Under the pieces are notes generated by a model, which saw only the letters and a list, made by a program, of their open reading frames with translations, was not told the DNA's origin and did not search any database. From the NCBI GenBank assembly GCA_026936335.1, contig JAPMXV010000045.1:248001-312000 (forward strand): a DNA stretch of 64,000 nucleotides, in the 5' to 3' direction. A program made the position numbers and the translations under genes. This document shows positions 8,802 to 42,841 of the stretch, in pieces (the first letter of the stretch is position 1; each line of letters begins with the position of its first letter). The stretch is from Mantamonas sphyraenae STR306. Taxonomy: Eukaryota; Protista; CRuMs.

Positions 8802-8980
8802 ACAGCGCGGACCGTGGAGACATGAACAAAGATGGTGTGTGTGTGTGTGTGTGGTGCATTGCCACGTGACTTTACACGTGAAACGGTTCCACGTGCCCGT
8901 GTGCCTCGCTGTGGCTTGATTCCGTGCGTCTTGCGCAAACGAAGAGGCGTCGTCGCCTGCTTGACCAGCCAATTTCAGCC

Positions 8981-10021
8981 ATGCGTGTTTATGTGGAGTG
9001 CAACGATGCACAGGAGTGTTTGGTCATTGCCGACGACGAGGCAGCAGAGATGGACGGTCAAGCGCTGTGTCTGGCGCTGCTGAAGCTGCTGGGTCACGAC
9101 GAGACGGCCTCGACCCACGCCACATGGAAGCTCTATGCACGAGGGGCCTCCAACAAGCTGTATGTCGTGCGTGAAACACTGCAGGACGTGTCGCAGCTCC
9201 ACGGGGCGGAGCTGGTGCTGCAGCAGGAGGCCAAGGTCGAGGGGAAGGGACTCGTAGGCGTCCAGGATGCAGAATGGCAGGCTAGGGTGCAGCTGGCTGC
9301 TTGCTATCGCATTTGGAACCTGTATGGATGGGATGAGGTGATCTACAACCACATCTCGTTGCGTGTGCCCGGTTCCCCGGAGCACTTTCTGATCAACCCG
9401 TTTGGCCTGCACTTTTCGGAGATCACAGCGTCGTCGCTGGTCAAGATTGACATTGATGGCAACATTGTGGACGCCGGGAGCACGACATACGGAGTCAACA
9501 AGGCTGGCTTTGTTATCCACAGTGCTGTGCACGCGAGCAGCGACGAGTACCACTGCGTCGCCCACATGCACAGCGAGGCGAGCGTGGCCGTGTCCTGCAC
9601 CAAGCGTGGCCTGGTACCCTTCAACCAAGTGGCCATGATTGTGGGCAACGTGGCCTACCACGACTACGAAGGCATTTCGGTGGACACGGACGAACGGAAG
9701 CGTCTCGTCCAGGATCTTGGCGACTGCAGGGTCATGTTGCTGCGCTCTCACGGCGCCCTCACGGTGGGTAAAACCATTGGAGAGGCATTTTACCTCACCT
9801 TTATGCTGGACAAGGCGTGCCGCATCCAGATCGACACGCTGTCCATGCTCGGCCCCGAGGCGTTTGACGACGCACAAATGGTCCAGGTCGATGACGGCAT
9901 TGTACAAAAGACGCGTGAGATTGCGAGGGGGTTCACCAGTGATGACGGCGGATTTGGTTTCATGGAGTTTGAGGCGATGATGCGCATGCTGGACCGCACT
10001 CAGCCCGATTTTCGCGAATGA
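8981..10021 (+). CDS. Class II aldolase/adducin-head family protein with ~85-aa N-terminal extension
   Basis: RVQLAACYR...YNHISLRVP...FLINPFGLHFSEITASSLVKID...GFVIHSAVH...CVAHMH...LRSHG. Confidence 0.88.
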   Translation: MRVYVECNDAQECLVIADDEAAEMDGQALCLALLKLLGHDETASTHATWKLYARGASNKLYVVRETLQDVSQLHGAELVLQQEAKVEGKGLVGVQDAEWQARVQLAACYRIWNLYGWDEVIYNHISLRVPGSPEHFLINPFGLHFSEITASSLVKIDIDGNIVDAGSTTYGVNKAGFVIHSAVHASSDEYHCVAHMHSEASVAVSCTKRGLVPFNQVAMIVGNVAYHDYEGISVDTDERKRLVQDLGDCRVMLLRSHGALTVGKTIGEAFYLTFMLDKACRIQIDTLSMLGPEAFDDAQMVQVDDGIVQKTREIARGFTSDDGGFGFMEFEAMMRMLDRTQPDFRE

Positions 10022-10176: not shown

Positions 10177-13100
10177 ATGTCTACCAACTCTGCCATCAAC
10201 CCGCTTGCATACCAGCTGGAGGACTACGGATTCTCGTGGGCGTCCAAGGACGACCTTGATCTGGATCTGTACAGCCGGTATGTTGCCGCCCGTGTCTTTT
10301 TCGCGTTCCGCCAGCGCCGCGTTTGCGGAAGAGTGCCGTTTGGGCGTGGTTATTGGCGCAAAAATACACTGACACACGCATATGGCCACCCAATCACAGC
10401 CAGTTTTTCGTGCTCGGTGCGCAGACCCAGAAGGCTCTGGCGTCGTTCAACGTCCTGATCATCGGCGCCACCGGTGTCGCTGTTGAAGTCGGTACGTACG
10501 CGGATCGAATTCTCTGCTCGCTTTTGGCCCTCTCTTTCCGGCCGGATTGCGCCTGCTGCATGGTACCGCCCTCTCGCATCCGACCTGCAATGCACGCGAT
10601 GTCTGCACCATTGTCGATGCCTTGCGCCGCGACGATGGCCATGCAGCACGTCTCTGTGTCGTGTTTGGGCTTGCGGAAATTTGTGTGTGCCCTGTGAACC
10701 CTTTTTTTTCCGTGCCCTCCCGTTGACACGTGGCCTTCTCACCCGCCTGCCCACAGCCAAGAACGTCGTCCTGGCCGGTCCCAAGAGCGTCACCGTGGCA
10801 GACAACTCCCCCACGCAGTGGACGGACCTTGCTTCTCAGGTATGTGACCCCTGTCTTGCCAATCCACAAGCAAGCAAAACGAACCGTGTGACGAGATCAA
10901 GCGGATCAATTTCTTCTCCCCGCTCACACCGATGAAAATACACACGCACTGCAGTTCTACCTGAGCGAGGAGGACGTGGGCAAGCCCCGCGCTGCCTGCT
11001 GCGTGCCCAAGCTGGCCGAGCTCAACCCGCACACAGAGGTCCACGCCTACGACGGCGAACTCACCCAAGAGTTCCTCACGGGCTTCCAGTGCGTCGTCGT
11101 GTGCGACAGCAACGACGAAGAGGCACTCATCCAGTACAACGGATGGTGCCACGAGGCCAACGTACCCTTCATTGCCACCACATCCCGTGGCCTTGCCGGC
11201 TATGTGTTCAGCGACTTTGGCAAGGAGTTTACGGTCATCGACAAGACGGGCGAGGACGAGCTGAGCGGATACATCCTGGACATCTCGCCCGAGGGACTCG
11301 TGTCGTGCACAGACGACGAGCCGCATGGACTGTCCGACGAGGACTCTCTGACATTCAGCGAGGTGCAGGGCCTGAGCAGCCTGAACGGTTGCGAACCGGT
11401 GAAGATCCGTGTGGAGACGCCGTTCTCGTTCACGATCCAGAACTTTGCAGCCGAGGGCAAGTACGAGGGTGGTGGTCTGTGGAAGCAGGTCAAGGTGCCG
11501 GAGGTGATTGAGTTCAACACACTGGCCGATGAACTGGTCAAGCCGACCGAGTTTATGCTGACGGACTTTGGCAAGTTTGGACGCGCCGAGCAGCTGCACG
11601 TGCTGTTCCGTGGTCTGGACGCGTACCAGAAGGCCAACGACGGGGCACTGCCGCCTGCGGGCAACTTTGAGGCAGCAGCCCAGGTTGTGGAGCTGGCCAA
11701 GAAGTGGAACGAGGAGCAAAAGGCAGCTGGCAACTGGAGCCTGGACGGCTTTGGTGAGGGCGATGAGAACGAGAAGCTGTACAAGATGTTTGGAGCGTAC
11801 GCAATGGGCCAGCTGAACCCGATGGCAGCCTTCTTTGGCGGCGTGGTGGGCCAGGAGGTGATCAAGACGAGCGCAGGCAAGTTTGGACCGATCCGCCAGT
11901 GGCTGTACTTTGATGCGTTTGAATGCATGCCGGACGAGCTGCTGACGGACGCAAGCGAGTTTGAGCTGGAGGGGACGCGATACGACGGACAGATTGCTGT
12001 GTTTGGCAAGACGTTCCAGCAGAAGGTGCTTGAGCAGAACCTGTTTATGGTTGGCTGCGGAGCGCTCGGCTGCGAGTTCTTCAAGAACTTTGCCATGATG
12101 GGCCTGGGCGCAGGCAACGGCATGATCTACGTGACAGACATGGACACGATCGAGCGCTCGAACCTGAACCGCCAGTTCCTGTTCCGCGAGCCGAACATCG
12201 GCCAGCTGAAGAGCGAGGCGGCAAGCGAGGCGATCAAGAAGATGAACCCGAACATCAACGTGACGACGTACAAGATCCCTGTGGGCAACGACACGGAGGA
12301 CACGTTCAACGACGAGTTCTGGAACAACCTGTCCAACGTGGTCAACGCCCTGGACAGCGTGACCGCACGTCGCTACGTCGACGCCCGCTGCGTGTTCTAC
12401 AAGAAGGCGCTGCTGGAGTCTGGCACGCTGGGCACGATGGCCAACGTGCAGGTTGTGCTGCCGGGCAAGAGTGAGTCGTACGGCTCCACGCAGGATCCTG
12501 CGGGCAAGGAGATCCCCATGTGCACGCTCAAGAACTTCCCCAACCAGATCGAGCACTGCATCGAGTGGTCCCGAGACAAGTTCCAGGGCCTGTTCCGCAA
12601 CGACATGGACGCCACCGTCAAGTACCTGAAGGAGGGTGCCGAGTACCTGGAGACCATGCCCAAGCAGGTCAAGCACCCCGTCGTGATCCGCGAGACGCTG
12701 GAAGCCGTCAAGGCCACCCTGGAGTCGTCCGAGGGCGTCACCTTTGACAAGTGCATCGAGTGGGCCCGCCTGCGTTTCCAGGAGATGTACTACAACGCCC
12801 CGGTGCAGCTTCTGACTGTGTACCCGCCCGACTCGGTGACCGCCGAGGGCACGCCCTTCTGGAGCGGCCCCAAGCGCGCCCCGACCCCGGTCGAGTTTGA
12901 CAACACGGACGAGCTGCACATGGGCTTCATCATTGCGGCAGCCAACATCCGCGCGTTCAACTACGGCATCGAGGTGCCCGAGGACATCGCCACCAACCCG
13001 GAGTACTTCTCCAAGGTGCTGGCCGACGTGGTGCTGCCCGAGTGGCAGCCCAACAGCAACGCCAAGATCCACACGGACGACAAGGAGGCTGCTGCGGACG

Positions 13101-13921
13101 TCGGTGGCGAGGAGGACGAGGAGATCTCGGCGCGCTTGACCAAGGAGCTGAGCGACCCGTCTGCGTGGCAGCAGCTCAAGCTGCAGAGCGCCCACTTTGA
13201 GAAGGACGACGACAGCAACTTCCACATCGACTTTATCACGGCATGCTCCAACCTGCGCGCGCGCAACTACGTGCTGCAGGAGGCCGACCGCCAGGCAACC
13301 AAGAAGATTGCCGGTCGCATCATCCCGGCCATTGCCACCACCACGGCCATGATCACGGGTATGGTGATGCTGGAGCAGTACAAGCTGCTGCAGGGCCACA
13401 ATGAGCTGGAGTACTACAAGAACGGCTACATCAACCTGGGTGTGCCTTCCTTCCAGCTGTCTGAGACCGTGGGTGCCATGATGACCCGCCCCAAGGATCC
13501 CGAGGTCGTGCAAGCCAACCTGGACCTGATGGACGGCAAGGAGGTGTCTGAGGAGCTGCAAAAGAAGCTGAAGCGCCAGGAGAACCGACCGGACGTCACC
13601 TACCCGGCCGAGGGTTACAACCTCTGGGACCGTGTGGACATCGAGGGTGCCCTCACTGTGCAGGAGCTCATGGACGAGATCCAGAACAGGTGCGGCTTCG
13701 ACGTGGACATGATCACATACCCGCTGCCCAAGAAGACCGTGCCCCTGTGGATGCGTGGCAAGAAGTTCAACGACCGCAAGGCCCAGAAGGTCACCGACGT
13801 CTTTGAGGAGGCTGTTGGCACCTCCCTGGCTGGCAAGAACAGCCTCCAGATCGACGTGGTCTGCTCCAAGGACGGCGGCGACCTCGAGGCTGGCCTGCCG
13901 CCTGTGGTCCTCCACTGGTAA
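10177..13921 (+). CDS. UBA1: Ubiquitin-activating enzyme E1, 4 exons
   Basis: Exons 10177-10277, 10400-10491, 10757-10839, 10955-13921. Motifs LYSRQ, VGCGALGCE, DMDTIERSNLNRQFLFR, catalytic PMCTLKNFP (Cys codon 12521-12523), FEKDDDSNFHIDFI, KIAGRIIPAIATTT and UFD. Confidence 0.96.
10955..12111 (+). repeat. Direct repeat copy 1 (1157 bp, within UBA1)
   Basis: Matches 14361-15517 at constant offset 3406; five substitutions seen, all synonymous. Confidence 0.95.
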
Positions 13922-14016
13922 AGAACCGGGTGAGATGTGAGTGATGTGTGTGTGTGTGTGTGTGTGTGTGATTTTGCGACAACGTCGCCACGAAAAAACA
14001 ATACACACCGACCCGC

Positions 14017-17000
14017 ATGAGCAGCCGTAGCCATTCCAGTGCCTCTGCCACTACAAGCATGTATCCCAAGCTGCAGCCGGTGTGGGGAAACACCACATGG
14101 GAAGCCATGCGCGAGTTTTCGTTGTTGGTGATTGGAGCGAGCGGTGCAGGCGTCACTGCCGTACAGGACGTGTTGAGCCTAAGCCCACGCCAGGTTGTCG
14201 TGTCAGACTCGACAGAGACGACATGGGCTGATGTCAGCTCCAACGTAGGTGGTGCCGGCGTTTGTTGTTTGAGAGGAACAAACACACCCACAGGCCGCTC
14301 TCTCTCGCTCACACTCACACACACGCACCGCTCACACACCGACACACACACGCATTGCAGTTCTACCTGAGCGAGGAGGACGTGGGCAAGCCCCGCGCTG
14401 CCTGCTGCGTGCCCAAGCTGGCCGAGCTCAACCCGCACACAGAGGTCCACGCCTACGACGGCGAACTCACCCAAGAGTTCCTCACGGGCTTCCAGTGCGT
14501 CGTCGTGTGCGACAGCAACGACGAAGAGGCACTCATCCAGTACAACGGATGGTGCCACGAGGCCAACGTACCCTTCATTGCCACCACATCCCGTGGCCTT
14601 GCCGGCTATGTGTTCAGCGACTTTGGCAAGGAGTTTACGGTCATCGACAAGACCGGCGAGGACGAGCTGAGCGGATACATCCTGGACATCTCGCCCGAAG
14701 GACTCGTGTCGTGCACAGACGACGAGCCGCATGGATTGTCCGACGAGGACTCTCTGACATTCAGCGAGGTGCAGGGCCTGAGCAGCCTGAACGGTTGCGA
14801 ACCGGTGAAGATCCGTGTGGAGACGCCGTTCTCGTTCACGATCCAGAACTTTGCAGCCGAGGGCAAGTACGAGGGTGGTGGTCTGTGGAAGCAGGTCAAG
14901 GTGCCGGAGGTGATTGAGTTCAACACACTGGCCGATGAACTGGTCAAGCCGACCGAGTTTATGCTGACGGACTTTGGCAAGTTTGGACGCGCCGAGCAGC
15001 TGCACGTGCTGTTCCGTGGTCTGGACGCGTACCAGAAGGCCAACGACGGGGCACTGCCGCCTGCGGGCAACTTTGAGGCAGCAGCCCAGGTTGTGGAGCT
15101 GGCCAAGAAGTGGAACGAGGAGCAAAAGGCAGCTGGCAACTGGAGCTTGGACGGCTTTGGTGAGGGCGATGAGAACGAGAAGCTGTACAAGATGTTTGGA
15201 GCGTACGCAATGGGCCAGCTGAACCCGATGGCAGCCTTCTTTGGCGGCGTGGTGGGCCAGGAGGTGATCAAGACGAGCGCAGGCAAGTTTGGACCGATCC
15301 GCCAGTGGCTGTACTTTGATGCGTTTGAATGCATGCCGGACGAGCTGCTGACGGACGCAAGCGAGTTTGAGCTGGAGGGAACGCGATACGACGGACAGAT
15401 TGCTGTGTTTGGCAAGACGTTCCAGCAGAAGGTGCTTGAGCAGAACCTGTTTATGGTTGGCTGCGGAGCGCTCGGCTGCGAGTTCTTCAAGAACTTTGCC
15501 ATGATGGGCCTGGGCGCGGTGTACGCAGGCGGAGCTGAGGCAGACGAAATCGAAGAGGCGTCGGCGGCTGCAAGGGCAAACAGCAACACGTTCCAGGTGC
15601 ACACGTTGGACCCATCGCCAGAGTTGGTGATCGACCAGGCTGTAGTGCGTGAGGTACGTCTGGGTGTGACAACACGGTTCCAAGCGAAAACCAACGCAGT
15701 TGCAGCGCCCCTGGGCGCAAGCATCATCGACGCGGGAGTGTTTGGCGTGCTGGGCAATGCTTGCATGCAAATCCGCGATGTGTGTGACATGTTGACCACA
15801 CAGGAGGAGGGGGATGGCCTTCCCATGCCGATGGGATTCCCCAAATCGCACAAGCACCTGCTCAGCCACGCCAGGCGATCTTTGCACGGTTTAGTGCAGG
15901 CCCTGGTGGACCTTGGCAACAATGAGGCGTTTGCAAGCGCACAGGGTTACCAGCGGGAAGTGCAACTGGCAATGATGCGTGCGACGGCGGGGGTGGACTG
16001 GGACGGGGAAGACGCAGCCGCTGTGCGCTCCGCGCTGTACGAGTGTGCATTGTTTGCATGGGACGAGGTAGGTGTGGCTAACCCTACTCGAATCCTGGAG
16101 ACATGGCCTGAAGACAGTGACGTGTGGCAGAAACACAGGATGCCGCACTGTGTAGGACATTTAGACGCAGGCAATCAAGAACACCGCGAATTTGTGGTGT
16201 GGATGGCTGCGATGTTTGCCAAATTGCTTGATGTGACCCTGGAGGGCCACCCGGACGACGACGAGGTTGCACATGCTATCCAGAGCCACAAACACTTGGT
16301 CCCGTTGTCTGCCGACAACAACGAAGAGTCAGGGTTGGGATCAGAGGACCAAAGTGCTTCGCACGCAAAGGCCATGATGGCTGAACTGGAGGAGTTGGAT
16401 GGCAAGCAGCTGTTTCGACAGCGCCTTGCCGGCAAGGATGACATTCCGTTGGCATCGACGTACCCCGAAGAGTTTGTGTTTGCCATGATCGCCACGAACC
16501 GGCTTATGGCAGATGTGTATCACATGCACAAGCAACCAGGGACCTGGGTGCGTCGCATGCTCTGGAGCGAACCTGGCAGCCCGCGGCTGATGCCTCCATG
16601 TCCATCAACCGTGTCACAAGTGGCGGGATTCGTTGGGCTGCAAGTGTTCATGGCCATGCAAGAGCCACACAGTACCGAACAAATGCGCGACGTGTTCTTG
16701 TCGGCACCCGGGACGATGGTAATGTCAGAACCCAGGGAGGTGCACAGGCGCGAGCTGCTGGATCCGAACGGAGACAAGGATGCGTTGGGGGCATTGGACG
16801 CTCTCACTGAATCTCGTCCAGACGGTGGATTGACTTGCTGGGATGCGTGGGTGTGGGACGCACGCGAGCTGGGATTGGAGACGGTGGGCCAGCTCAAGCA
16901 GTACATGAGCGAACACCTGGCCATCACCCCGGACGTGTTTACCATGCAATTGCTCGGACAAGACGCGGGACATGTCAAGGCCGTGTGGTGCAGTCATGAT

Positions 17001-17165
17001 TTTCGACCCCGTCCGCAACCGTGGGACACCTCGTTGGAGGAATTTCTGCTTGGTCAGAGCGAGTGGCCGGCCAACAGCTCGTTTGTGCGCATCGATGTGT
17101 CTGCCACAGCAGAGGATGGAGAAGCGGGCATTGACGTAGCGCCCATCATGCTGAGGATGCGATGA
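14017..17165 (+). CDS. Divergent full-length UBA1 paralog lacking the catalytic Cys and ATP-binding motif (pseudo-E1), 2 exons
   Basis: Exons 14017-14244 and 14361-17165; uninterrupted frame. 14361-15517 is near-identical to UBA1; the rest aligns distantly to the AAD, SCCH and UFD. Confidence 0.8.
14361..15517 (+). repeat. Direct repeat copy 2 (1157 bp, within UBA1 paralog)
   Basis: Matches 10955-12111; identity starts at the shared 3' splice site and ends abruptly after GGCCTGGGCGC. Confidence 0.95.
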
Positions 17166-17215
17166 TTGGGATGAGCGCTGTGGAAACCAGGCAAAAGCAA
17201 CAAACAACGCGTCTC

Positions 17216-18070
17216 ATGTCGTCCACACCAAGTTTCATCATCACAGGAGCATCCCGCGGGTACGGAGCATGCATTGCAGAGGTGTTGGCGAGCGAATACA
17301 CAGGGGCACGATTCGCTCTTGTGGCAAGGTCGAAGGAGGCGCTGGAATCGGTGGCGTCTGAGTTGAGCGGAGTTGCAAGTGTAGAGTCGTTTGCTATGGA
17401 CTTGAGTGCAAACTCGAGCGAGTTGTTTGATGCGTGGACGGCCATGCTTGACACTTTGAACACAAACGGATTTTGGCAAGAGTGCTCGCAGGCGATCCTG
17501 GTGCACAACGCAGGCAGCCTGGGCCCCACCAAGAAGCTGGACGAGTTTACACGCGAAGACTTGGCGGATATGACGGCGTACATGAATCTGAACGTGGTGG
17601 CCAACATGGTGGGCACCTCGCTGACGCAGCAAGCAGTGGCAGCAGCGGGAGTGGGCGAGTTCACGCAGGTGAACATCTCTTCGCTACTGGCGGTGCAGCC
17701 GTTTGCCGGACACGCAACGTACTGCACAGGGAAAGCAGCACGGGACATGCTGAGCCAGGTGGTGGGTGCAGAGGCGAATGTTGATGATGACGGTCAAGAA
17801 GGACCCAACAACCTGCGCGTGCGCACTCTCAACTGGAGCCCTGGACCCATGGAGACGGACATGCAGGTCAAACTGCGTGCTGGTGGCGTACACCAACAGT
17901 CGTTTCAGGATCTCAAAGACAAGGGGGGTCTTGTGGACCTCGAGGTCAGTGCCCGCGCCATGGTCAAGGTCTTGCAAGCTGACGAGTACGAGTCTGGCGC
18001 ACATGTCGATGTCTACGACGTCCTGGATGTGTCCCGCGACAACGGGCCGCAAGAGGACGGTGCCGAGTGA
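17216..18070 (+). CDS. SPR: Sepiapterin reductase (SDR family)
   Basis: ITGASRGYG, LVHNAGSLG, YMNLNV, VNISSL, YCTGKAARDML, LNWSPGPMETDMQ, ESGAHVDVYD; alternative ATG at 17171. Confidence 0.88.
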   Translation: MSSTPSFIITGASRGYGACIAEVLASEYTGARFALVARSKEALESVASELSGVASVESFAMDLSANSSELFDAWTAMLDTLNTNGFWQECSQAILVHNAGSLGPTKKLDEFTREDLADMTAYMNLNVVANMVGTSLTQQAVAAAGVGEFTQVNISSLLAVQPFAGHATYCTGKAARDMLSQVVGAEANVDDDGQEGPNNLRVRTLNWSPGPMETDMQVKLRAGGVHQQSFQDLKDKGGLVDLEVSARAMVKVLQADEYESGAHVDVYDVLDVSRDNGPQEDGAE

Positions 18071-29108: not shown

Positions 29109-29384
29109 AGACCACGCGACAGATCTCTGATTTGCTGAGCGTTTCTGGCTGCAGCACAGTGACGTGGTGGGACGAGGGGGGGGGAAGGTTGGGGGGAGGA
29201 ATGCGTTGGGGGGAGTGAGGAGGATGGAGGATGGATGTTGAGGAACGAACGGGTGACGTGTGCCTGCAATGAAGAGGCACATTGGGCAATGGGTCTGCAG
29301 ACACATCTCTGTGCACGTGCACCATGCCCCTTCCATTCCTGGCCATGTGCGATGGCTGGACCAACAATCAACCAACACAGGGAA

Positions 29385-30308
29385 ATGGCGTGGACACAAG
29401 CGGCGAGCAAGAAACGGACCGAACGCGCGTGTCTGCTGCTGCTGGCCTGCATGCTGGGCTCGGTGTGTGCATACAAACCCATCATCATGATGCATGGCAT
29501 CACAGGGTCCTTCCACGACTTTGACGACCTTGTCCAGTGGGTGGACGAGCTGCACCCGGGCACAGTGACGGTGCAGTTGGACGTGGACAACAAAGACGCA
29601 AGCGTTTTCAAGCCAATGACTGAGCAGACGGCAGACGCATTGGCACTGGTGAAGGACATTGTGAGCGGGAAACACCCGGGATACAACGCAAGCGACTTTG
29701 AAGACGGGTACCACGTGATTGGGCACAGCCAGGGAGGGTTGTTGATTCGCGCGGCCATCCAGCAGTGGGACGGTCACAAGGTGCAGAACTTCCTGTCGTT
29801 TGCTGGCGTACAGCAGGGAGTGTATGGTGTGGATGAGATGGTGTGGCGTTTCTTCCCTGGGCTGGGAGTGGACGCCGTAACCGAGCTCCTTTACACCAAA
29901 GAGGGCCAAGAGCACTTTTCCTTTGCCCAATACTGGCACGACTCGAAGCTGCCGCAGCAGTACCTGCGTGACTGCGTGTACCTGCCAGTGATGAACAACG
30001 TGGTGCCCCACAACAACACCGCACGGTACAAGGCCAACTTTGAGGCCATCAAGAACGTGTATCTGTTTGGCAGTCCCCAGGACGGCACCATCATTCCCTG
30101 GTACTCATCACAGTTTGCCTTTTATGACAAGTGGATGGACTACAGCCCACCGGATCTGCAGCCGCTGTGGCTCAACGACACCATCGGCCTCCGTGGCATG
30201 TACGAACAGGGCAGGGTGCACTTTAGAATTATTGGGGACATTGAGCACAGCCAGTGGGTTCGCAACAAGGAGAACTTTGTGAAGAACGTGCTGCAGTACC
30301 TGGACTGA
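29385..30308 (+). CDS. Palmitoyl-protein thioesterase (PPT1/PPT2 family, PPT2-like), copy A
   Basis: Signal peptide, YKPIIMMHG, IGHSQGGL, FAQYWHD, FGSPQDGTIIPW.SSQF, catalytic His in IEHSQW. Confidence 0.9.
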   Translation: MAWTQAASKKRTERACLLLLACMLGSVCAYKPIIMMHGITGSFHDFDDLVQWVDELHPGTVTVQLDVDNKDASVFKPMTEQTADALALVKDIVSGKHPGYNASDFEDGYHVIGHSQGGLLIRAAIQQWDGHKVQNFLSFAGVQQGVYGVDEMVWRFFPGLGVDAVTELLYTKEGQEHFSFAQYWHDSKLPQQYLRDCVYLPVMNNVVPHNNTARYKANFEAIKNVYLFGSPQDGTIIPWYSSQFAFYDKWMDYSPPDLQPLWLNDTIGLRGMYEQGRVHFRIIGDIEHSQWVRNKENFVKNVLQYLD

Positions 30309-30390
30309 GAGGGAAGGAGCAAACCCCCCACCTTTTCCCTGTCCCGCACACACGCTATCATCAACACCAACAACAAATGCTTCACCTTTC

Positions 30391-30430
30391 ACTGAACTTC
30401 ACTGAACTTCACTGAACTTCTCTGAACTTC
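30391..30430. repeat. 10-bp tandem repeat (ACTGAACTTC)x4 just after the Ras stop; two copies in the other arm (41595-41614)
   Basis: Read directly from sequence. Confidence 0.9.
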
Positions 30431-30432
30431 AT

Positions 30433-31475
30433 TTACAGGATCAGGCACTTCTTCTTCTTCTTCTTGGTGTCCACCTTGTCGCCGCCAGCACGAGCCTTGC
30501 GGATCTCGCGCACCAGCTCAAAGAACGACTCCTCCACGTTGATGCGGGCCTTGGCAGATCCCTCCATGTGCGGGCAGCCAAACGACTTGGCCAGGTCCTT
30601 GCCCTCAGCAGTCGTCACCTGACGCTCGTGGTCCAAATCGCACTTGTTGCCAATGATGACCATCGGCACCTGGTCCTGGTCCTTCACGCGCAGAATCTGC
30701 TCGCGGAAGCAGGGATTTCGTCAAACGACGAGCGCGACGTGATCGAGTACACACACAGGAAGCCTTCGCCACTGCGCATGTAACCGTCACGCATAGCTGC
30801 GTACTCCTCCTGGCCAGCCGTGTCCAGGATGTCCAGCAGACACGACTCGTCATCGATCGTCACCTGCTTGCGGTACGAATCCTCTGTACGTGCAACCACC
30901 CACGTCCCCATGTGTGTCAGTTTCCCTGTCAATCTTCCTCTCCATCCGCCTCCCGGCGCCCCAAAACTTTGCCCAAGAGGGAAATCTCTCCACTCGCCCC
31001 TTCACAAACAAAACACCCTCCTGCCAAGTACACACACATCCCATGTCCTCCCCACATGTCCTCCTGCCCCGTCTGCCACACCCTCCACACATCCATGCAC
31101 CTTCCGTCGCCCTCGTCTCGCCCCCGCCTGTGTTCTCCACAGCCTTATCCACATGTGCCCACCCTCGAAAAAAAGCGCAATTCAGGGAACCCGCGCCCCA
31201 CCTCCACTTCCCTGCCCACCTGTCCCTTCCCCCACACCTTCCATTTCTCCCTCTCTCCATCCCCGTCCCATCCATGCACCTCTCTCCGCCCTCTCCTCCC
31301 TCCAATGCCATCCACCGCGTCCCGGCGTCCGTCTCCCCGCGCAACCGACTTGCCGTTGAAACTCACCAATGGTCGGGTCGTACTCGTCCACGAACGAGTT
31401 CTGGATCAGCTGGATGGTCAGGGCAGACTTGCCCACACCACCGCCGCCGACAACAACGCACTTGTATTCAGTCAT
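30433..31475 (-). pseudogene. Ras GTPase copy A with 1-nt frameshift near 30709 (pseudogene or consensus error)
   Basis: Exons 31475-31367 and 30883-30433 (451 nt versus 452 nt in copy B); CCTGC-TTCC here versus CCTGCCTTCC in copy B. Confidence 0.75.
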
Positions 31476-31843
31476 TGTGTTTTGTGTGTGTTTTCCTGAT
31501 TGGGTTGGGGTGGATGGAGCGGGTGAGGCGCGTTTGGTTTTGACGGCACCGGGAGAGGATAACGGGGAATTCTCGGTGTGGGGCACTAGCCAGGGGAGGT
31601 TGGGAAGATAAGGGGCGGGGAGAAAGGCAGGCTGGGGCTGGTGTGTGGGTGAAAGGGGGGGTGGGGGATTGGGGATGGGGTGGACGTGTGTGCAGTGGTG
31701 TGGTGTGGAGTGATCACACACCGACACCGAGGGATGGGTTCCAGAAACAACGTCTGGCTGTACACTCACACACCCCACACCCACACACCATCTTTATCTC
31801 TCTCTTTCTCTCTATAAAACAATGTTCATTTGGGGGGTAGGCA

Positions 31844-32293
31844 CTATGCAACGATCTCAACGCCGCTCTTGTTGGTTGTTTCCAGATCGTCGGCGCCCTG
31901 GATGGCATCTGCCCATGCTGTGGCTTCGTCGTGGGAGTAGAAGCGAAAATGATAGGTGCGCTCGGGTGTGACGACATCGACGACGTGTGTCCATTCCACC
32001 TCGTCGTCTGTGTTGTCGTTGAGTGTGACGGCTGTGACAATATACCGCGCCACGAGGCCGTCTGCATACTCGAGCGAGTCTTGAAAGTAGATAAGATAGG
32101 AAGGGGTCAGTGCCAGCCAGCAGGGCTTCCATTTGTGACCAAGGAGGCCAAACAGCGATGTGCCACCGCCTTTTTTGTCGCAGCGGCCTTGACGAGAGAC
32201 CGTTTCGTCCGGATACTGAGAGTGGACCCAGGAAGCGACCGCGTCACTGGTGTCGCGCACGGCCGTCTCGTCGTCGTGCTCCGGCAGGCTCAT
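31844..32293 (-). CDS. Small PH-domain protein
   Basis: RQGRCDKKGG..KWKPCWLAL..LIYFQ..VDVVTPERTYHFRFYSHDEATAWADAIQ. Confidence 0.82.
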   Translation of the reverse strand: MSLPEHDDETAVRDTSDAVASWVHSQYPDETVSRQGRCDKKGGGTSLFGLLGHKWKPCWLALTPSYLIYFQDSLEYADGLVARYIVTAVTLNDNTDDEVEWTHVVDVVTPERTYHFRFYSHDEATAWADAIQGADDLETTNKSGVEIVA

Positions 32294-40088: not shown

Positions 40089-40549
40089 GTGATGGACGCC
40101 ACAGCATGGGCAGATGCCATCCAGGGCGCCGACGATCTGGAAACAACCAACAAGAGCGGCGTTGAGATCGTTGCATAGTGCCTACCCCCCAAATGAACAT
40201 TGTTTTATAGAGAGAAAGAGAGAGATAAAGATGGTGTGTGTGGTGTGGGTGTGTGAGTGTACAGCCAGACGGTGTTTCTGGAACCCATCCCTCGGTGTCG
40301 GTGTGTGATCACTCCACACCACACCACTGCACACACGTCCACCCCATCCCCAATCCCCCACCCCCCTTTTCACCCACACACCACCCCCAATCTGCCTTTC
40401 TCCTCGCCCCTTATCTTCCTAACCTCCCCTGGCTAGTGCCCCACACCCGATGAATTCCCCCGTTATCCTCTCCCGGTGCCGTCAAAACCAAACGCGCCTC
40501 ACCCGCTCCATCCACCCCAACCCAATCAGGAAAACACACACAAAACACA

Positions 40550-41592
40550 ATGACTGAATACAAGTGCGTTGTTGTCGGCGGCGGTGGTGTGGGCAAGTCT
40601 GCCCTGACCATCCAGCTGATCCAGAACTCGTTCGTGGACGAGTACGACCCGACCATTGGTGAGTTTCAACGGCAAGTCGGTTGCGCGGGGAGACGGACGC
40701 CGGGACGCGGTGGATGGCATTGGAGGGAGAAGAGGGCGGAGAGAGGTGCATGGATGGGACGGGGATGGAGAGAGGGAGAAATGGAAGGTGTGGGGGAAGG
40801 GACAGGTGGGCAGGGAAGTGGAGGTGGGGCGCGGGTTCCCTGAATTGCGCTTTTTTTCGAGGGTGGGCACATGTGGATAAGGCTGTGGAGAACACAGGCG
40901 GGGGCGAGACGAGGGCGACGGAAGGTGCATGGATGTGTGGAGGGTGTGGCAGACGGGGCAGGAGGACATGTGGGGAGGACATGGGATGTGTGTGTACTTG
41001 GCAGGAGGGTGTTTTGTTTGTGAAGGGGCGAGTGGAGAGATTTCCCTCTTGGGCAAAGTTTGGGGCGCCGGGAGGCGGATGGAGAGGAAGATTGACAGGG
41101 AAACTGACACACATGGGGACGTGGGTGGTGGCACGTACAGAGGATTCGTACCGCAAGCAGGTGACGATCGATGACGAGTCGTGTCTGCTGGACATCCTGG
41201 ACACGGCTGGCCAGGAGGAGTACGCAGCTATGCGTGACGGTTACATGCGCAGTGGCGAAGGCTTCCTGTGTGTGTACTCGATCACGTCGCGCTCGTCGTT
41301 TGACGAAATCCCTGCCTTCCGCGAGCAGATTCTGCGCGTGAAGGACCAGGACCAGGTGCCGATGGTCATCATTGGCAACAAGTGCGATTTGGACCACGAG
41401 CGTCAGGTGACGACTGCTGAGGGCAAGGACCTGGCCAAGTCGTTTGGCTGCCCGCACATGGAGGGATCTGCCAAGGCTCGCATCAACGTGGAGGAGTCGT
41501 TCTTTGAGCTGGTGCGCGAGATCCGCAAGGCTCGTGCTGGCGGCGACAAGGTGGACACCAAGAAGAAGAAGAAGAAGTGCCTGATCCTGTAA
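40550..41592 (+). CDS. RAS: Ras GTPase copy B (intact), 2 exons
   Basis: Exons 40550-40658 and 41141-41592. [44 protein letters not shown], polybasic [10 protein letters not shown]. Confidence 0.96.
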
Positions 41593-41696
41593 ATGAAGTT
41601 CAGTGAAGTTCAGTGAAAGGTGAAGCATTTGTTGTTGGTGTTGATGATAGCGTGTGTGCGGGACAGGAAAAAGCTGGGGGGTTTGCTCCATCCCTC

Positions 41697-42620
41697 TCAG
41701 TCCAGGTACTGCAGCACGTTCTTCACAAAGTTCTCCTTGTCGTGCACCCAGTCCATGTGTGTGACGTCGCCAAACACCTTAAAGTGAGCCCTGCCCTGTT
41801 CGTACATGCCTCGGAGGCCGATGGTGTCGTTGAGCCACAGCGGCTGCAGATCCGGTGGGCTGTAGTCCATCCACTTGTCATAAAAGGCAAACTGTGATGA
41901 GTACCAGGGAATGATGATGCCGTCTTGGGGACTGCCAAACAGATACACGTTCTTGATGGCCTCAAAGTTGGCCTTGTACCGTGCGGTGTTGTTGTGCGGC
42001 ACCACGTTGTTCATCACTGGCAGGTACACGCAGTCGCGCAGGTACTGCTGCGGCAGCTTCGAGTCGTGCCAGTATTGGGCAAAGGAAAAGTGCTCTTGGC
42101 CCTCTTTGGTGTAAAGGAGCTCGGTTACGGCGTCCACTCCCAGCCCGGGGAAGAAACGCCACACCATCTCATCCACACCATACACTCCCTGCTGTACGCC
42201 AGCAAACGACAGGAAGTTCTGCACCTTGTGACCGTCCCACTGCTGGATGGCCGCGCGAATCAACAACCCTCCCTGGCTGTGCCCAATCACGTGGTACCCG
42301 TCTTCAAAGTCGCTTGCGTTGTATCCCGGGTGTTTCCCGCTCACAATGTCCTTCACCAGTGCCAATGCGTCTGCCGTCTGCTCAGTCATTGGCTTGAAAA
42401 CGCTTGCGTCTTTGTTGTCCACGTCCAACTGCACCGTCACTGTGCCCGGGTGCAGCTCGTCCACCCACTGGACAAGGTCGTCAAAGTCGTGGAAGGACCC
42501 TGTGATGCCATGCATCATGATGATGGGTTTGTATGCACACACCGAGCCCAGCATGCAGGCCAGCAACAGCAGACACGCGCGTTCGGTCCGTTTCTTGCTC
42601 GCCGCTTGTGTCCACGCCAT
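41697..42620 (-). CDS. Palmitoyl-protein thioesterase, copy B
   Basis: Same 924-nt ORF as copy A; His region reads VTHMDW. Confidence 0.9.
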   Translation of the reverse strand: MAWTQAASKKRTERACLLLLACMLGSVCAYKPIIMMHGITGSFHDFDDLVQWVDELHPGTVTVQLDVDNKDASVFKPMTEQTADALALVKDIVSGKHPGYNASDFEDGYHVIGHSQGGLLIRAAIQQWDGHKVQNFLSFAGVQQGVYGVDEMVWRFFPGLGVDAVTELLYTKEGQEHFSFAQYWHDSKLPQQYLRDCVYLPVMNNVVPHNNTARYKANFEAIKNVYLFGSPQDGIIIPWYSSQFAFYDKWMDYSPPDLQPLWLNDTIGLRGMYEQGRAHFKVFGDVTHMDWVHDKENFVKNVLQYLD

Positions 42621-42841
42621 TTCCCTGTGTTGGTTGATTGTTGGTCCAGCCATCGCACATGGCCAGGAATGGAAGGGGCATGGTGCACGTGCACAGGGAT
42701 GTGTCTGCAGACCCATTGCCCAATGTACCTCTTCATTGCAGGCACACGTCACCCGTTCGTTCCTCAACATCCATCCTCCATCCTCCTCACTCCCCCCAAC
42801 GCATTCCTCCCCCCAACCTTCCCCCCCCTCGTCCCACCACG

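What the first reader, a model, noticed from the sequence alone, without database searches (positions are those of the whole stretch)
10177..17165. Tandem pseudo-E1: intact but catalytically dead UBA1 paralog with a 385-codon tract kept identical to UBA1
Seen: a second E1-like gene starts 95 bp after UBA1. Its ends are highly diverged yet alignable along the whole fold (IIDAGVFGVLGN/LLESGTLGTMAN, FPKSHKHLLSHAR/FPNQIEHCIEWSR, RLMPPCPSTVSQVAG/RIIPAIATTTAMITG, LTCWDAW/YNLWDRV, RIDVSA/QIDVVC). The ATP-binding DMDTIERSNLNRQFLFR is gone and PMCTLKNFP has become PMPMGFP, so the thioester Cys is absent (nearest Cys is about 14 residues upstream, in DVCDML). The middle 1157 bp (rest of IAD, FCCH, up to the GxGxxG loop) shows only five substitutions, all synonymous. 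The frame is open for ~1000 codons and one intron position is shared. Inference: an old duplicate retained as a non-catalytic E1 (E2/Ub decoy, scaffold or dimer partner) and partly homogenised by gene conversion. I know of no characterised full-length UBA1 pseudoenzyme.
Basis: partly seen in the sequence, partly recalled or inferred. Interest (0 to 1): 0.8.

Follow-up and report, generated by a model that had tools for sequence, protein, structure and literature searches.

The report
Catalytically dead tandem UBA1 copy
Directly behind the ubiquitin-activating enzyme (UBA1) gene of the protist Mantamonas sphyraenae lies an intact second copy, transcribed at least in its 3' part, whose front half is 99.5% identical to UBA1. 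Its catalytic back half has diverged almost beyond recognition and lost every catalytic motif, making it a candidate 'pseudo-E1', though it is unproven that it still does anything.

Summary
Gene 1 (10177-13921, four exons, 1080 aa) is a complete UBA1. Gene 2 (14017-14244 + 14361-17165, 1010 aa) starts 95 bp after it.

- **Shared tract:** 1172 bp (10940-12111 = 14346-15517) differs at six bases: one intronic, five exonic, all synonymous. Outside the tract no DNA similarity remains.
- **Homology of the diverged parts:** gene 2's exon 1 is about 36% identical to UBA1 by my hand count. Its last 548 codons are 17-21% identical and collinear with E1 to the C-terminus (BLASTP 1e-5; hhalign 90%, E 1.5e-6; ESM neighbours all SCCH+UFD).
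- **Lost motifs:** the NLNRQFLFR ATP motif, the NALDN Asp and the thioester Cys are all deleted.
- **Not an artefact:** Illumina contigs show both junctions and double depth over the tract. One run that behaves like RNA-seq covers gene 2's unique part at about one fifth of UBA1's depth.
- **ORF:** it is open against 6e-10 odds.

Retention as a functional pseudoenzyme is not shown. Allelic SNPs in the unique half are 7 non-synonymous to 3 synonymous. No orthologue was found, though close relatives are barely sampled. AF2 is unconfident over the degenerate adenylation core, and gene 2's first exon has no RNA coverage.

Verdict: a real, non-catalytic UBA1 paralogue with a gene-converted half; function open.

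The parts
10177..13921 (+). Gene 1: canonical UBA1. Exons are 10177-10277, 10400-10491, 10757-10839 and 10955-13921, giving 1080 aa.
   Evidence: Pfam finds ThiF, E1_FCCH, E1_4HB, UBA_E1_SCCH and E1_UFD, all significant. It is 44-48% identical to fungal and holozoan UBA1 and 65% identical to the closest relative in the database, an unnamed transcriptome entry. Splice sites were read. In run X3 a spliced exon 3/exon 4 junction is present in a contig.
10940..12111 (+). Shared tract, copy in gene 1. It covers the last 15 nt of intron 3 plus 1157 nt of exon 4, encoding the rest of the IAD, the FCCH, the 4HB, and the first strand and Gly-rich loop of the AAD.
   Evidence: It matches 14346-15517 at 1166 of 1172 positions.
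13922..14016 (+). 95-bp spacer between the two genes, containing a (GT)n microsatellite.
   Evidence: Read directly.
14017..14244 (+). Gene 2 exon 1 (76 aa): a diverged homologue of the E1 N-terminus (YSRQ...GxGxxG region), followed by a GT donor at 14245.
   Evidence: A gap-free hand alignment to gene 1 exons 1-3 gives 22 of 61 identical residues, ending at the same phase-0 intron position (sequences). Pfam gives no hit. The run taken as RNA, X3, shows no coverage here.
14245..14360 (+). Gene 2 intron (116 nt, GT..AG, CA-rich). It is unalignable to gene 1's intron 3 except for the last 15 nt.
14346..15517 (+). Shared tract, copy in gene 2.
   Evidence: It is 99.5% identical to 10940-12111, and all five exonic differences are synonymous. 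Contig depth is about twice that of the unique flanks in DNA runs X1 and X2. X4 contig 15165-15661 links gene 2's allele at 15380 to the unique part with no mismatch.
14361..17165 (+). Gene 2 exon 2 (934 codons plus stop).
   Evidence: The frame is open. Pfam finds FCCH, 4HB and the start of ThiF in the first 386 residues, and only a weak SCCH match (E 0.008-0.013) after that.
15518..15716 (+). Degenerate core of the adenylation domain: 66 codons stand where UBA1 has about 98. The NLNRQFLFR motif, the NALDN motif and a 16-residue block are deleted.
   Evidence: MAFFT alignment. hhalign leaves C-half residues 1-65 unaligned. No frame-shifted remnant was found. AF2 pLDDT is below 50.
15819..15842 (+). 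LPMPMGFP, the site where UBA1 has IPMCTLKNFP. The thioester Cys lies within a 4-residue deletion.
   Evidence: BLASTP, hhalign and MAFFT give the same gap.
15717..17162 (+). The diverged but collinear remainder of the AAD, the SCCH-like helical region and the UFD-like end.
   Evidence: hhalign against a 22-sequence E1 profile gives probability 90%, E 1.5e-6, over 419 columns to the last residues. ESM feature neighbours are all SCCH+UFD clusters at 0.91. Gene 2 keeps 48 of 162 highly conserved E1 columns. An RNA-like contig covers 15488-17175 at depth 28.

Best explanation
Gene 2 is a real tandem paralogue of UBA1 in Mantamonas sphyraenae that can no longer activate ubiquitin.

- **Front half:** the rest of the inactive adenylation domain, FCCH, four-helix bundle and Gly-rich loop are kept identical to the working enzyme by gene conversion. 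The last event was recent (dS about 0.02). Conversion has probably been recurrent since the duplication, because the flanks have no DNA homology left with which to start one.
- **Diverged parts:** the first exon and the whole back half (adenylation core, Cys domain, ubiquitin-fold domain) escaped conversion. They evolved at least 30 times faster than UBA1 and lost the ATP/Mg2+ motifs and the thioester Cys, yet kept length, collinearity and about 30% of the fold-defining residues.
- **Expression:** the gene is transcribed, at least its 3' unique part, and its frame has been kept open.
- **Inferred mechanism, not shown:** it is made as a full-length, non-enzymatic E1-like protein under weak sequence constraint that acts, if at all, by binding. 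It would present UBA1-identical IAD/FCCH surfaces next to a catalytically inert body, for instance competing with or modulating UBA1's partners.
For: **Real DNA**
- Both junctions and 2x depth appear in independent Illumina contigs.
- The assembly is a PacBio FALCON assembly (PMC10492846).
- The genome holds exactly two copies of the tract.

**E1 origin of the diverged half**
- BLASTP gives E 1e-5 over 532 collinear residues.
- hhalign gives 90% probability, E 1.5e-6.
- ESM neighbours are all SCCH+UFD clusters.
- The tree attaches it next to gene 1 and the relative's UBA1, although without support.

**Dead enzyme**
- The motif deletions are seen.

**Selection for an open frame**
- Chance odds of the open frame are 6e-10, with 5-18 stops in the other frames.
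- No indels appear between haplotypes in 1.65 kb of unique coding DNA, against three in the first ~45 bp after the stop.
- GC1/2/3 of 0.65/0.43/0.66 is typical of ordinary genes in this window.

**Constraint on the converted half**
- All five differences are synonymous. The probability is 0.006-0.02 if gene 2 were neutral there.

**Transcription**
- In run X3 the contigs are spliced and intergenic depth is zero. Gene-2-specific contig 15488-17175 has depth 28, against 143 for the gene-1-specific contig and 168 for the shared tract.
Against: - Heterozygous SNPs in the unique half are 3 synonymous and 7 non-synonymous (pN/pS about 0.68). That is compatible with neutrality, though n=10.
- Identity is a flat 17-18% in every C-terminal domain, so no domain stands out as preserved.
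- AF2 with an E1 alignment leaves residues 386-492 below pLDDT 50, and the rest of the C-half is only 50-80. The single-sequence model is useless.
- The ESM 'recognition' score of 1969 is below the value that 91% of known-family proteins reach.
- No orthologue appeared among 1.8 billion representatives or in the word search. This is weak evidence, because neither search returned a near-identical self-match. The nearest relative, at 65%, is one partial transcriptome entry.
- Gene 2's exon 1 has zero depth in the RNA-like run. This may be tip-clipping by the assembler, but use of its own start codon is unverified.
- Nothing tests binding.
Confidence: 0.45

Rival explanations
1. Expressed relic. 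Gene 2 was once a functional, divergent E1-like gene, or never acquired a function. It is now drifting. It is transcribed because it sits in a very compact, co-oriented gene run, and its front half looks healthy only because UBA1 keeps overwriting it.
For: - pN/pS is about 0.68 in the unique half.
- Divergence is uniform across domains.
- The adenylation core is heavily eroded by deletions.
- AF2 confidence and the ESM recognition score are both low.
- No orthologue was detected.
- GC3 is 0.66 against 0.91 in UBA1.
Against: - A sequence that drifted to 17-21% identity without constraint should carry many stops and frameshifts, yet 624 diverged codons are open (P 6e-10).
- Gene 2 keeps 48 of 162 fold-defining columns.
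- All five post-conversion differences are synonymous.
- No indel separates the haplotypes inside the coding part, whereas three lie just after the stop.
Confidence: 0.3
2. One locus with two alternative giant last exons. UBA1's exon 3 donor (10839) can splice either to 10955 or, skipping 3.4 kb, to the identical acceptor at 14361. That would give a UBA1 N-terminus joined to the dead C-half. Gene 2's own exon 1 would be little used.
For: - The acceptor region is identical from 15 nt upstream of both exons.
- The RNA-like run X3 has depth 28 on gene 2's unique part but zero on its exon 1 and intron. The X3 contig also runs unbroken from gene 1's exon 3 into the tract.
Against: - Gene 2 has its own ATG-initiated, E1-homologous exon 1, with an open frame and a GT donor at the homologous phase-0 position. 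That would be pointless if it were unused.
- Exon 1 plus its 5'UTR is about 300 nt and would be a low-coverage dead-end branch, which I expect a de Bruijn assembler to clip (my inference). The tool itself warns that a hole in coverage proves nothing.
- No joint 10839^14361 can be told apart from 10839^10955 in contigs.
Confidence: 0.1
3. Assembly or polishing artefact. The identical tract would be a mis-join, or a paralogue overwritten during consensus polishing.
For: Near-identical 1.2-kb repeats 3.4 kb apart are the kind of place where this can happen. The assembly was polished with Racon and then with short reads.
Against: - De Bruijn contigs of four separate Illumina runs contain k-mers across 14346 and across 15517/15518 for gene 2, as well as the gene-1 versions.
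- The tract has about 2x the depth of unique DNA (105 vs 53; 70 vs 43).
- No third, diverged version of the middle part exists in the contigs or the genome.
- X4 contig 15165-15661 is a perfect match across the junction.
- The six fixed differences show that the assembler kept the copies apart.
Confidence: 0.02
4. Still an enzyme. It would retain non-canonical activity using the upstream Cys (DVCDML), or adenylation supplied in trans.
For: A Cys lies 16 residues before the deleted site. The Gly-rich loop is intact because it lies inside the tract.
Against: - The Arg/Asn/Gln motif, the Mg2+ Asp and a 16-residue block of the Rossmann core are deleted. About 41 of 141 residues of this part are missing.
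- That Cys aligns to a strand of the AAD, not to the Cys-domain entry.
Confidence: 0.03

Closest known systems
Canonical UBA1/Uba1 ubiquitin E1 (e.g. PDB 3CMM yeast, 6DC6 human)
   Same: Same six-domain order, IAD-FCCH-4HB-AAD-SCCH-UFD, collinear to the last residue. The N-half is identical to the organism's own UBA1. The AF2 model aligns over the full length to UBA1 structures (TM about 0.6), but this is circular because E1 sequences formed the alignment.
   Different: It has no ATP-binding Arg/Asn/Gln motif, no Mg2+ Asp and no thioester Cys. The C-half is 17-21% identical with about 90 residues deleted. It therefore fails the defining catalytic features.
Non-catalytic ThiF-fold partners: SAE1/Aos1, NAE1/APPBP1/Ula1, and UBA1's own inactive adenylation domain (from general knowledge of the E1 family)
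   Same: These are degenerate adenylation folds that lost nucleotide binding yet are retained as structural partners of an active domain.
   Different: Those proteins pair with an active domain to make one enzyme and are conserved across eukaryotes. In gene 2 the normally active half is the dead one, no active partner is known, and the gene looks lineage-specific.
UEV pseudo-E2s (Mms2/UEV1A, TSG101) (general knowledge)
   Same: A ubiquitin-cascade enzyme fold that lacks the catalytic Cys and works by binding ubiquitin or partners. This is the model for what a pseudo-E1 could be.
   Different: UEVs are ancient, conserved and functionally proven. None of this is shown for gene 2.
Mosaic paralogues shaped by gene conversion / concerted evolution (e.g. 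globin or RHD/RHCE-type tracts; general knowledge)
   Same: A sharply bounded near-identical tract sits inside otherwise diverged tandem paralogues. A second recent duplication (2.8-kb inverted repeats, 96-100% identity) lies 12 kb away in the same window.
   Different: The contrast here is extreme: 99.5% identity against no detectable DNA similarity. The tract also ends exactly before the catalytic motifs.

Membership tests
UBA1-type ubiquitin E1 (active enzyme) | Domain order IAD-FCCH-4HB-AAD-SCCH-UFD | tested here: met
   Pfam finds FCCH, 4HB and ThiF in the N-half. The C-half is collinear with the E1 profile to the end (hhalign 90%, E 1.5e-6). ESM neighbours are SCCH+UFD clusters. For the C-half this is weak homology, not a Pfam-level match.
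UBA1-type ubiquitin E1 (active enzyme) | ATP/Mg2+ site of the active adenylation domain (Gly loop + NLNRQFLFR + Asp of NALDN) | tested here: not met
   Only the Gly loop is present, and it lies inside the converted tract. NLNRQFLFR and the 16-residue block just after the NALDN motif fall in alignment gaps. At NALDN, gene 2 reads VAAPL and the Mg2+ Asp falls in the gap. No frame-shifted remnant was found.
UBA1-type ubiquitin E1 (active enzyme) | Thioester Cys in P-x-C-T-L-K-N-F-P | tested here: not met
   Gene 2 has PM----GFP. Three independent aligners give the same 4-residue gap. The Cys is invariant in all 22 reference E1s, including two other paralogues of this genome.
UBA1-type ubiquitin E1 (active enzyme) | C-terminal ubiquitin-fold domain that recruits E2 | tested here: inconclusive
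   hhalign runs through it without gaps. Gene 2 keeps 5 of 7 conserved columns, including the W-D pair. AF2 pLDDT is 57-83. Pfam E1_UFD does not match. E2 binding was not tested.
Pseudoenzyme (non-catalytic homologue retained for a function) | Homologous to an enzyme but lacking its catalytic residues | tested here: met
Pseudoenzyme (non-catalytic homologue retained for a function) | Expressed | tested here: inconclusive
   In run X3, which I infer to be RNA from its spliced contigs and unequal depths, contig 15488-17175 has depth 28. Exon 1 is not covered, and there are no raw reads, strand information or protein data.
Pseudoenzyme (non-catalytic homologue retained for a function) | Kept by purifying selection / conserved in relatives | tested here: inconclusive
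   For: the frame is open (P 6e-10), all 5 tract differences are synonymous, and no coding indels separate the haplotypes. Against: 7 non-synonymous to 3 synonymous allelic SNPs. No orthologue was found, but relatives are almost unsampled.
Unprocessed pseudogene | Disrupted reading frame or lost splice/start signals | tested here: not met
   The ATG, GT..AG intron and 1010 open codons are all present.
Gene-conversion tract between tandem paralogues | Near-identity sharply bounded by diverged flanks, with both copies physically present | tested here: met
   Single-molecule reads spanning both copies could not be examined here.

The most novel reading that the evidence does not exclude
Gene 2 is a selected, full-length pseudo-E1: a UBA1-derived protein that cannot adenylate or thioesterify ubiquitin. 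Ongoing gene conversion holds its IAD/FCCH/4HB half identical to the working enzyme, so that it keeps recognising the same partner(s). Its freed back half evolves rapidly. It would act as a regulator or competitor in ubiquitin activation. This would be the first natural full-length UBA1 pseudoenzyme, and an example of conversion being used to keep a decoy matched to its model.
Probability: 0.3. Interest if true: 0.7.

Novelty: new variant of a known kind. Interest (0 to 1): 0.5.

Why it matters
Pseudo-E2s, pseudo-DUBs and pseudo-E3s are established regulators of ubiquitin signalling. A full-length pseudo-E1 derived from UBA1 has not been described, as far as my two literature searches could show. 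If this protein is made and selected, it offers a natural experiment on what the non-catalytic surfaces of an E1 (IAD, FCCH, four-helix bundle, UFD) can do on their own.

It is also a very clean case of mosaic evolution. One half of the gene is frozen to its neighbour by conversion while the other half runs free, with the boundary falling exactly in front of the catalytic motifs.

If it is only a drifting relic, it is still a useful annotation warning. Half of it scores as a perfect UBA1, so automatic pipelines will call it an active E1. The organism, a CRuMs flagellate near the root of Amorphea, also carries at least four intact UBA1-type E1s, which matters for reconstructions of the ancestral ubiquitin toolkit.

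Tried and rejected
**Searches that found no relatives of the unique 548 aa**
- The word-index search gave no hit.
- Exhaustive phmmer against 1.84 billion representatives gave one hit, a low-complexity repeat protein that I rejected as spurious.
- phmmer against PDB sequences gave nothing even at E 10.
- A word search with the shared N-half, looking for proteins with a UBA1-like front and a different back, returned only ordinary E1s at 48% identity or less.

**Structure**
- The single-sequence AF2 model of the C-half had mean pLDDT 37 and was uninformative.
- The AF2 model built on an E1 alignment, and its Foldseek hits, are circular for the C-half. I used them only for the per-residue confidence profile.

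**Sequence history**
- I tested whether a frameshift hides the ATP motif. tblastn of UBA1's core against all frames of 15400-16000 found nothing.
- blastn found no collinear residual DNA similarity in the flanks.
- A tree to decide which paralogue gene 2 derives from was not decisive. Its branch is about 10 substitutions per site and the placement beside gene 1 is unsupported. tblastn scored the C34 paralogue (1.7e-9) better than gene 1, so parentage from sequence alone is unresolved. Adjacency and the shared intron position favour gene 1.

**Reads**
- Only contigs were on offer, so transcript starts, strand, gene 2's exon 1-exon 2 junction and phasing across the tract could not be read.

- No complex prediction was run, because I make no binding claim.
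All searches used single exons by reference, so the first 76 residues of gene 2 and the first 92 of gene 1 were never searched together with the rest.


Full report
**Organism and assembly.** The window is contig 45 (248001-312000) of a 25,061,354-bp genome in 78 contigs. Size, contig number and GC (59%) match the FALCON PacBio assembly of the diploid CRuMs flagellate Mantamonas sphyraenae. That assembly was polished with Racon and short reads, and its genes are mostly mono-exonic (PMC10492846). The identification is an inference from those figures.

**Anatomy.** Gene 1 has four exons (10177-10277, 10400-10491, 10757-10839, 10955-13921; 1080 aa). Its last exon carries the complete Pfam set of a ubiquitin E1: ThiF x2, E1_FCCH, E1_4HB, UBA_E1_SCCH and E1_UFD.
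- After a 95-bp spacer with a (GT)n run, gene 2 starts at ATG 14017.
- Its exon 1 (14017-14244, 76 aa) ends at a GT donor.
- A 116-nt CA-rich intron ends at AG 14360.
- Exon 2 runs open to the TGA at 17163-17165, giving 1010 aa in all.

**The identical tract.** At a constant offset of 3406 bp, 10940-12111 equals 14346-15517. That is 1172 bp with six differences, and identity falls to background within a few bases at both ends.
- The tract begins 15 nt inside the intron and ends just after the Gly-rich loop (GLGA), immediately before the ATP-binding residues.
- The five exonic differences are all synonymous, giving dS of about 5/256 = 0.02.
- If gene 2 were free of constraint and UBA1 fully constrained, five out of five synonymous would have probability 0.006-0.02.
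- The genome holds exactly these two copies.

**Not an artefact.** Logan contigs of four public runs of the same organism were laid on 13900-17300.
- In X1 and X2, unique DNA has depth 53 and 43 and the tract has 105 and 70. These runs are DNA, because their contigs continue into gene 1's intron.
- Contigs leave the tract at 15517 in two directions, one into gene 2's unique sequence and one into gene 1's.
- The same holds at the left edge, 14346.
- X4 has a perfect contig, 15165-15661, across the right junction.
- The junctions therefore exist in Illumina reads independently of the PacBio assembly.
- Contigs cannot phase 1.2 kb, so single-molecule confirmation is still wanted.

**Are the diverged ends really E1?** Yes.
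- Exon 1 aligns without gaps to gene 1's exons 1-3, with 22 of 61 residues identical by my hand count, ending at the same phase-0 intron.
- BLASTP of the last 548 residues against UBA1's last 602 gives 19% identity over 532 collinear residues, E 1e-5.
- hhalign against a 22-sequence E1 alignment gives probability 90%, E 1.5e-6, over 419 columns from the LLESGTLG strand to the last residues.
- A language-model feature search, independent of alignment, returns only SCCH+UFD clusters at 0.91.
- Pfam alone sees only a sub-threshold SCCH match.
- No DNA similarity and no frame-shifted remnant survive.
- Identity to gene 1 is a flat 17-18% in AAD part 1, SCCH, AAD part 2 and UFD.
- Gene 2 keeps 48 of 162 columns that are at least 90% conserved in E1s, and 30 of those columns fall in gaps.

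**Catalytically dead.** In the MAFFT alignment NLNRQFLFR is deleted, the NALDN Asp is gone, and a 16-residue block of the Rossmann core is missing. P-x-C-T-L-K-N-F-P reads PM----GFP. BLASTP and hhalign give the same Cys gap. That Cys is invariant in all 22 reference E1s, including two other paralogues of this genome.

**Is it used?**
- *Evidence for:*
  - 548 open codons have chance odds of 6e-10, and the other frames have 5-18 stops.
  - Codon-position GC (0.65/0.43/0.66) is like ordinary genes in this window, whereas UBA1 reaches GC3 0.91.
  - The haplotypes differ by three indels in the first ~45 bp after the stop but by none in the coding part.
  - Run X3 behaves like RNA-seq. Its contig joins gene 1's exon 3 directly to exon 4. 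Depth is zero in the gene 2 exon 1/intron bins (14014-14355) and at 17206-17300, downstream of gene 2. Depth is 143 on gene-1-specific, 28 on gene-2-specific (15488-17175) and 168 on shared sequence.
- *Evidence against, or open:*
  - The contigs differ from the window at ten sites in gene 2's unique half, which I read as allelic because the genome is diploid. Three are synonymous and seven non-synonymous (two of them in one codon), so pN/pS is about 0.68.
  - X3 shows no depth on gene 2's exon 1. A roughly 300-nt low-coverage dead-end branch might be clipped by the assembler (my inference), so this proves nothing. It does leave open that UBA1's exon 3 is spliced to gene 2's identical acceptor.
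  - AF2 with an E1 alignment is confident for residues 1-385 (pLDDT 80-95), below 50 for 386-492, and 50-83 for the SCCH-like helices and the UFD.

**Age and relatives.** In a tree of the C-half, gene 2's branch is about 10 substitutions per site against 0.34 for gene 1. It attaches beside gene 1 and the closest foreign UBA1 (P0002, 65% identical, a partial transcriptome entry), but without support. No orthologue was found by any search. No search returned a near-identical self-match, so this genome's proteins are probably not in those libraries and close relatives are barely represented. Absence therefore says little.

**How the pattern arose (inference).** The flanks retain no DNA homology, so a single late homologous conversion into an already diverged gene is hard to start. 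Recurrent conversion since the duplication, with the ends escaping and then diverging freely, explains several things at once:
- the exact collinearity;
- the in-frame join;
- the sharp edges;
- the small dS.

The tract's intermediate GC3 (0.80, between 0.91 and 0.66) would fit two-way exchange, but this is speculative. A second recent duplication (2.8-kb inverted repeats, 96-100% identical) lies at 29177-31927 / 40095-42828.

**Verdict.** A selected non-catalytic function remains a hypothesis (about 0.3-0.45).

Noticed in passing
G000 contigs C7:63384-66281, C34:383675-386209, C4:369119-371597 (loci L012, L013, L014/L015): Besides the pair studied here, the genome encodes three more full-length UBA1-type E1s, 42-46% identical to gene 1. 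Pfam (run on two) finds ThiF, FCCH, 4HB and SCCH in C7 and C34, plus UFD in C34 only, and both keep the catalytic Cys; C4 was not checked. That makes at least four intact UBA1-type E1s in a 25-Mb genome, which is unusual. None has a dead neighbour like gene 2.
   Followed up: partly
window 10790-14008 (-) and 13791-15887 (-): Very long antisense ORFs (1072 and 698 aa) lie opposite the two E1 genes. Their GC pattern (GC1 0.73-0.83, GC3 0.60) is the mirror image of the GC3-rich sense frame. They are a by-product of codon bias, not genes.
   Followed up: partly
window 17162-17210: Gene 2's stop overlaps an ATG (ATGA) that opens the downstream short-chain dehydrogenase ORF (17162-18070, Pfam adh_short). 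The haplotypes differ here by +4, +1 and -1 nt indels and four SNPs. This stretch is therefore non-coding, and the real start of the downstream gene must lie further on.
   Followed up: partly
window 10955-17162: There is a stepwise GC3 pattern: 0.91 in UBA1's unique half, 0.80 in the shared tract and 0.66 in gene 2's unique half. The intermediate value might reflect two-way exchange between a highly expressed and a weakly expressed gene, or it might only reflect domain composition.
   Followed up: no
window 29177-31927 and 40095-42828: Inverted repeats about 2.8 kb long, 96-100% identical in five collinear blocks, flank an ~8-kb segment. This is another recent duplication or homogenisation event 12 kb from the E1 pair.
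   Followed up: partly
window 8924-10021 (+): The gene directly upstream of UBA1 is a class II aldolase/adducin-type protein (Pfam Aldolase_II, E 3e-48) with an unassigned N-terminal extension of about 120 residues.
   Followed up: no
window 13945-13970 and 14290-14355: A (GT)n microsatellite sits in the 95-bp spacer and CA-rich repeats fill gene 2's intron right up to the left edge of the identical tract. Such repeats are possible break or initiation sites for the conversion events.
   Followed up: no
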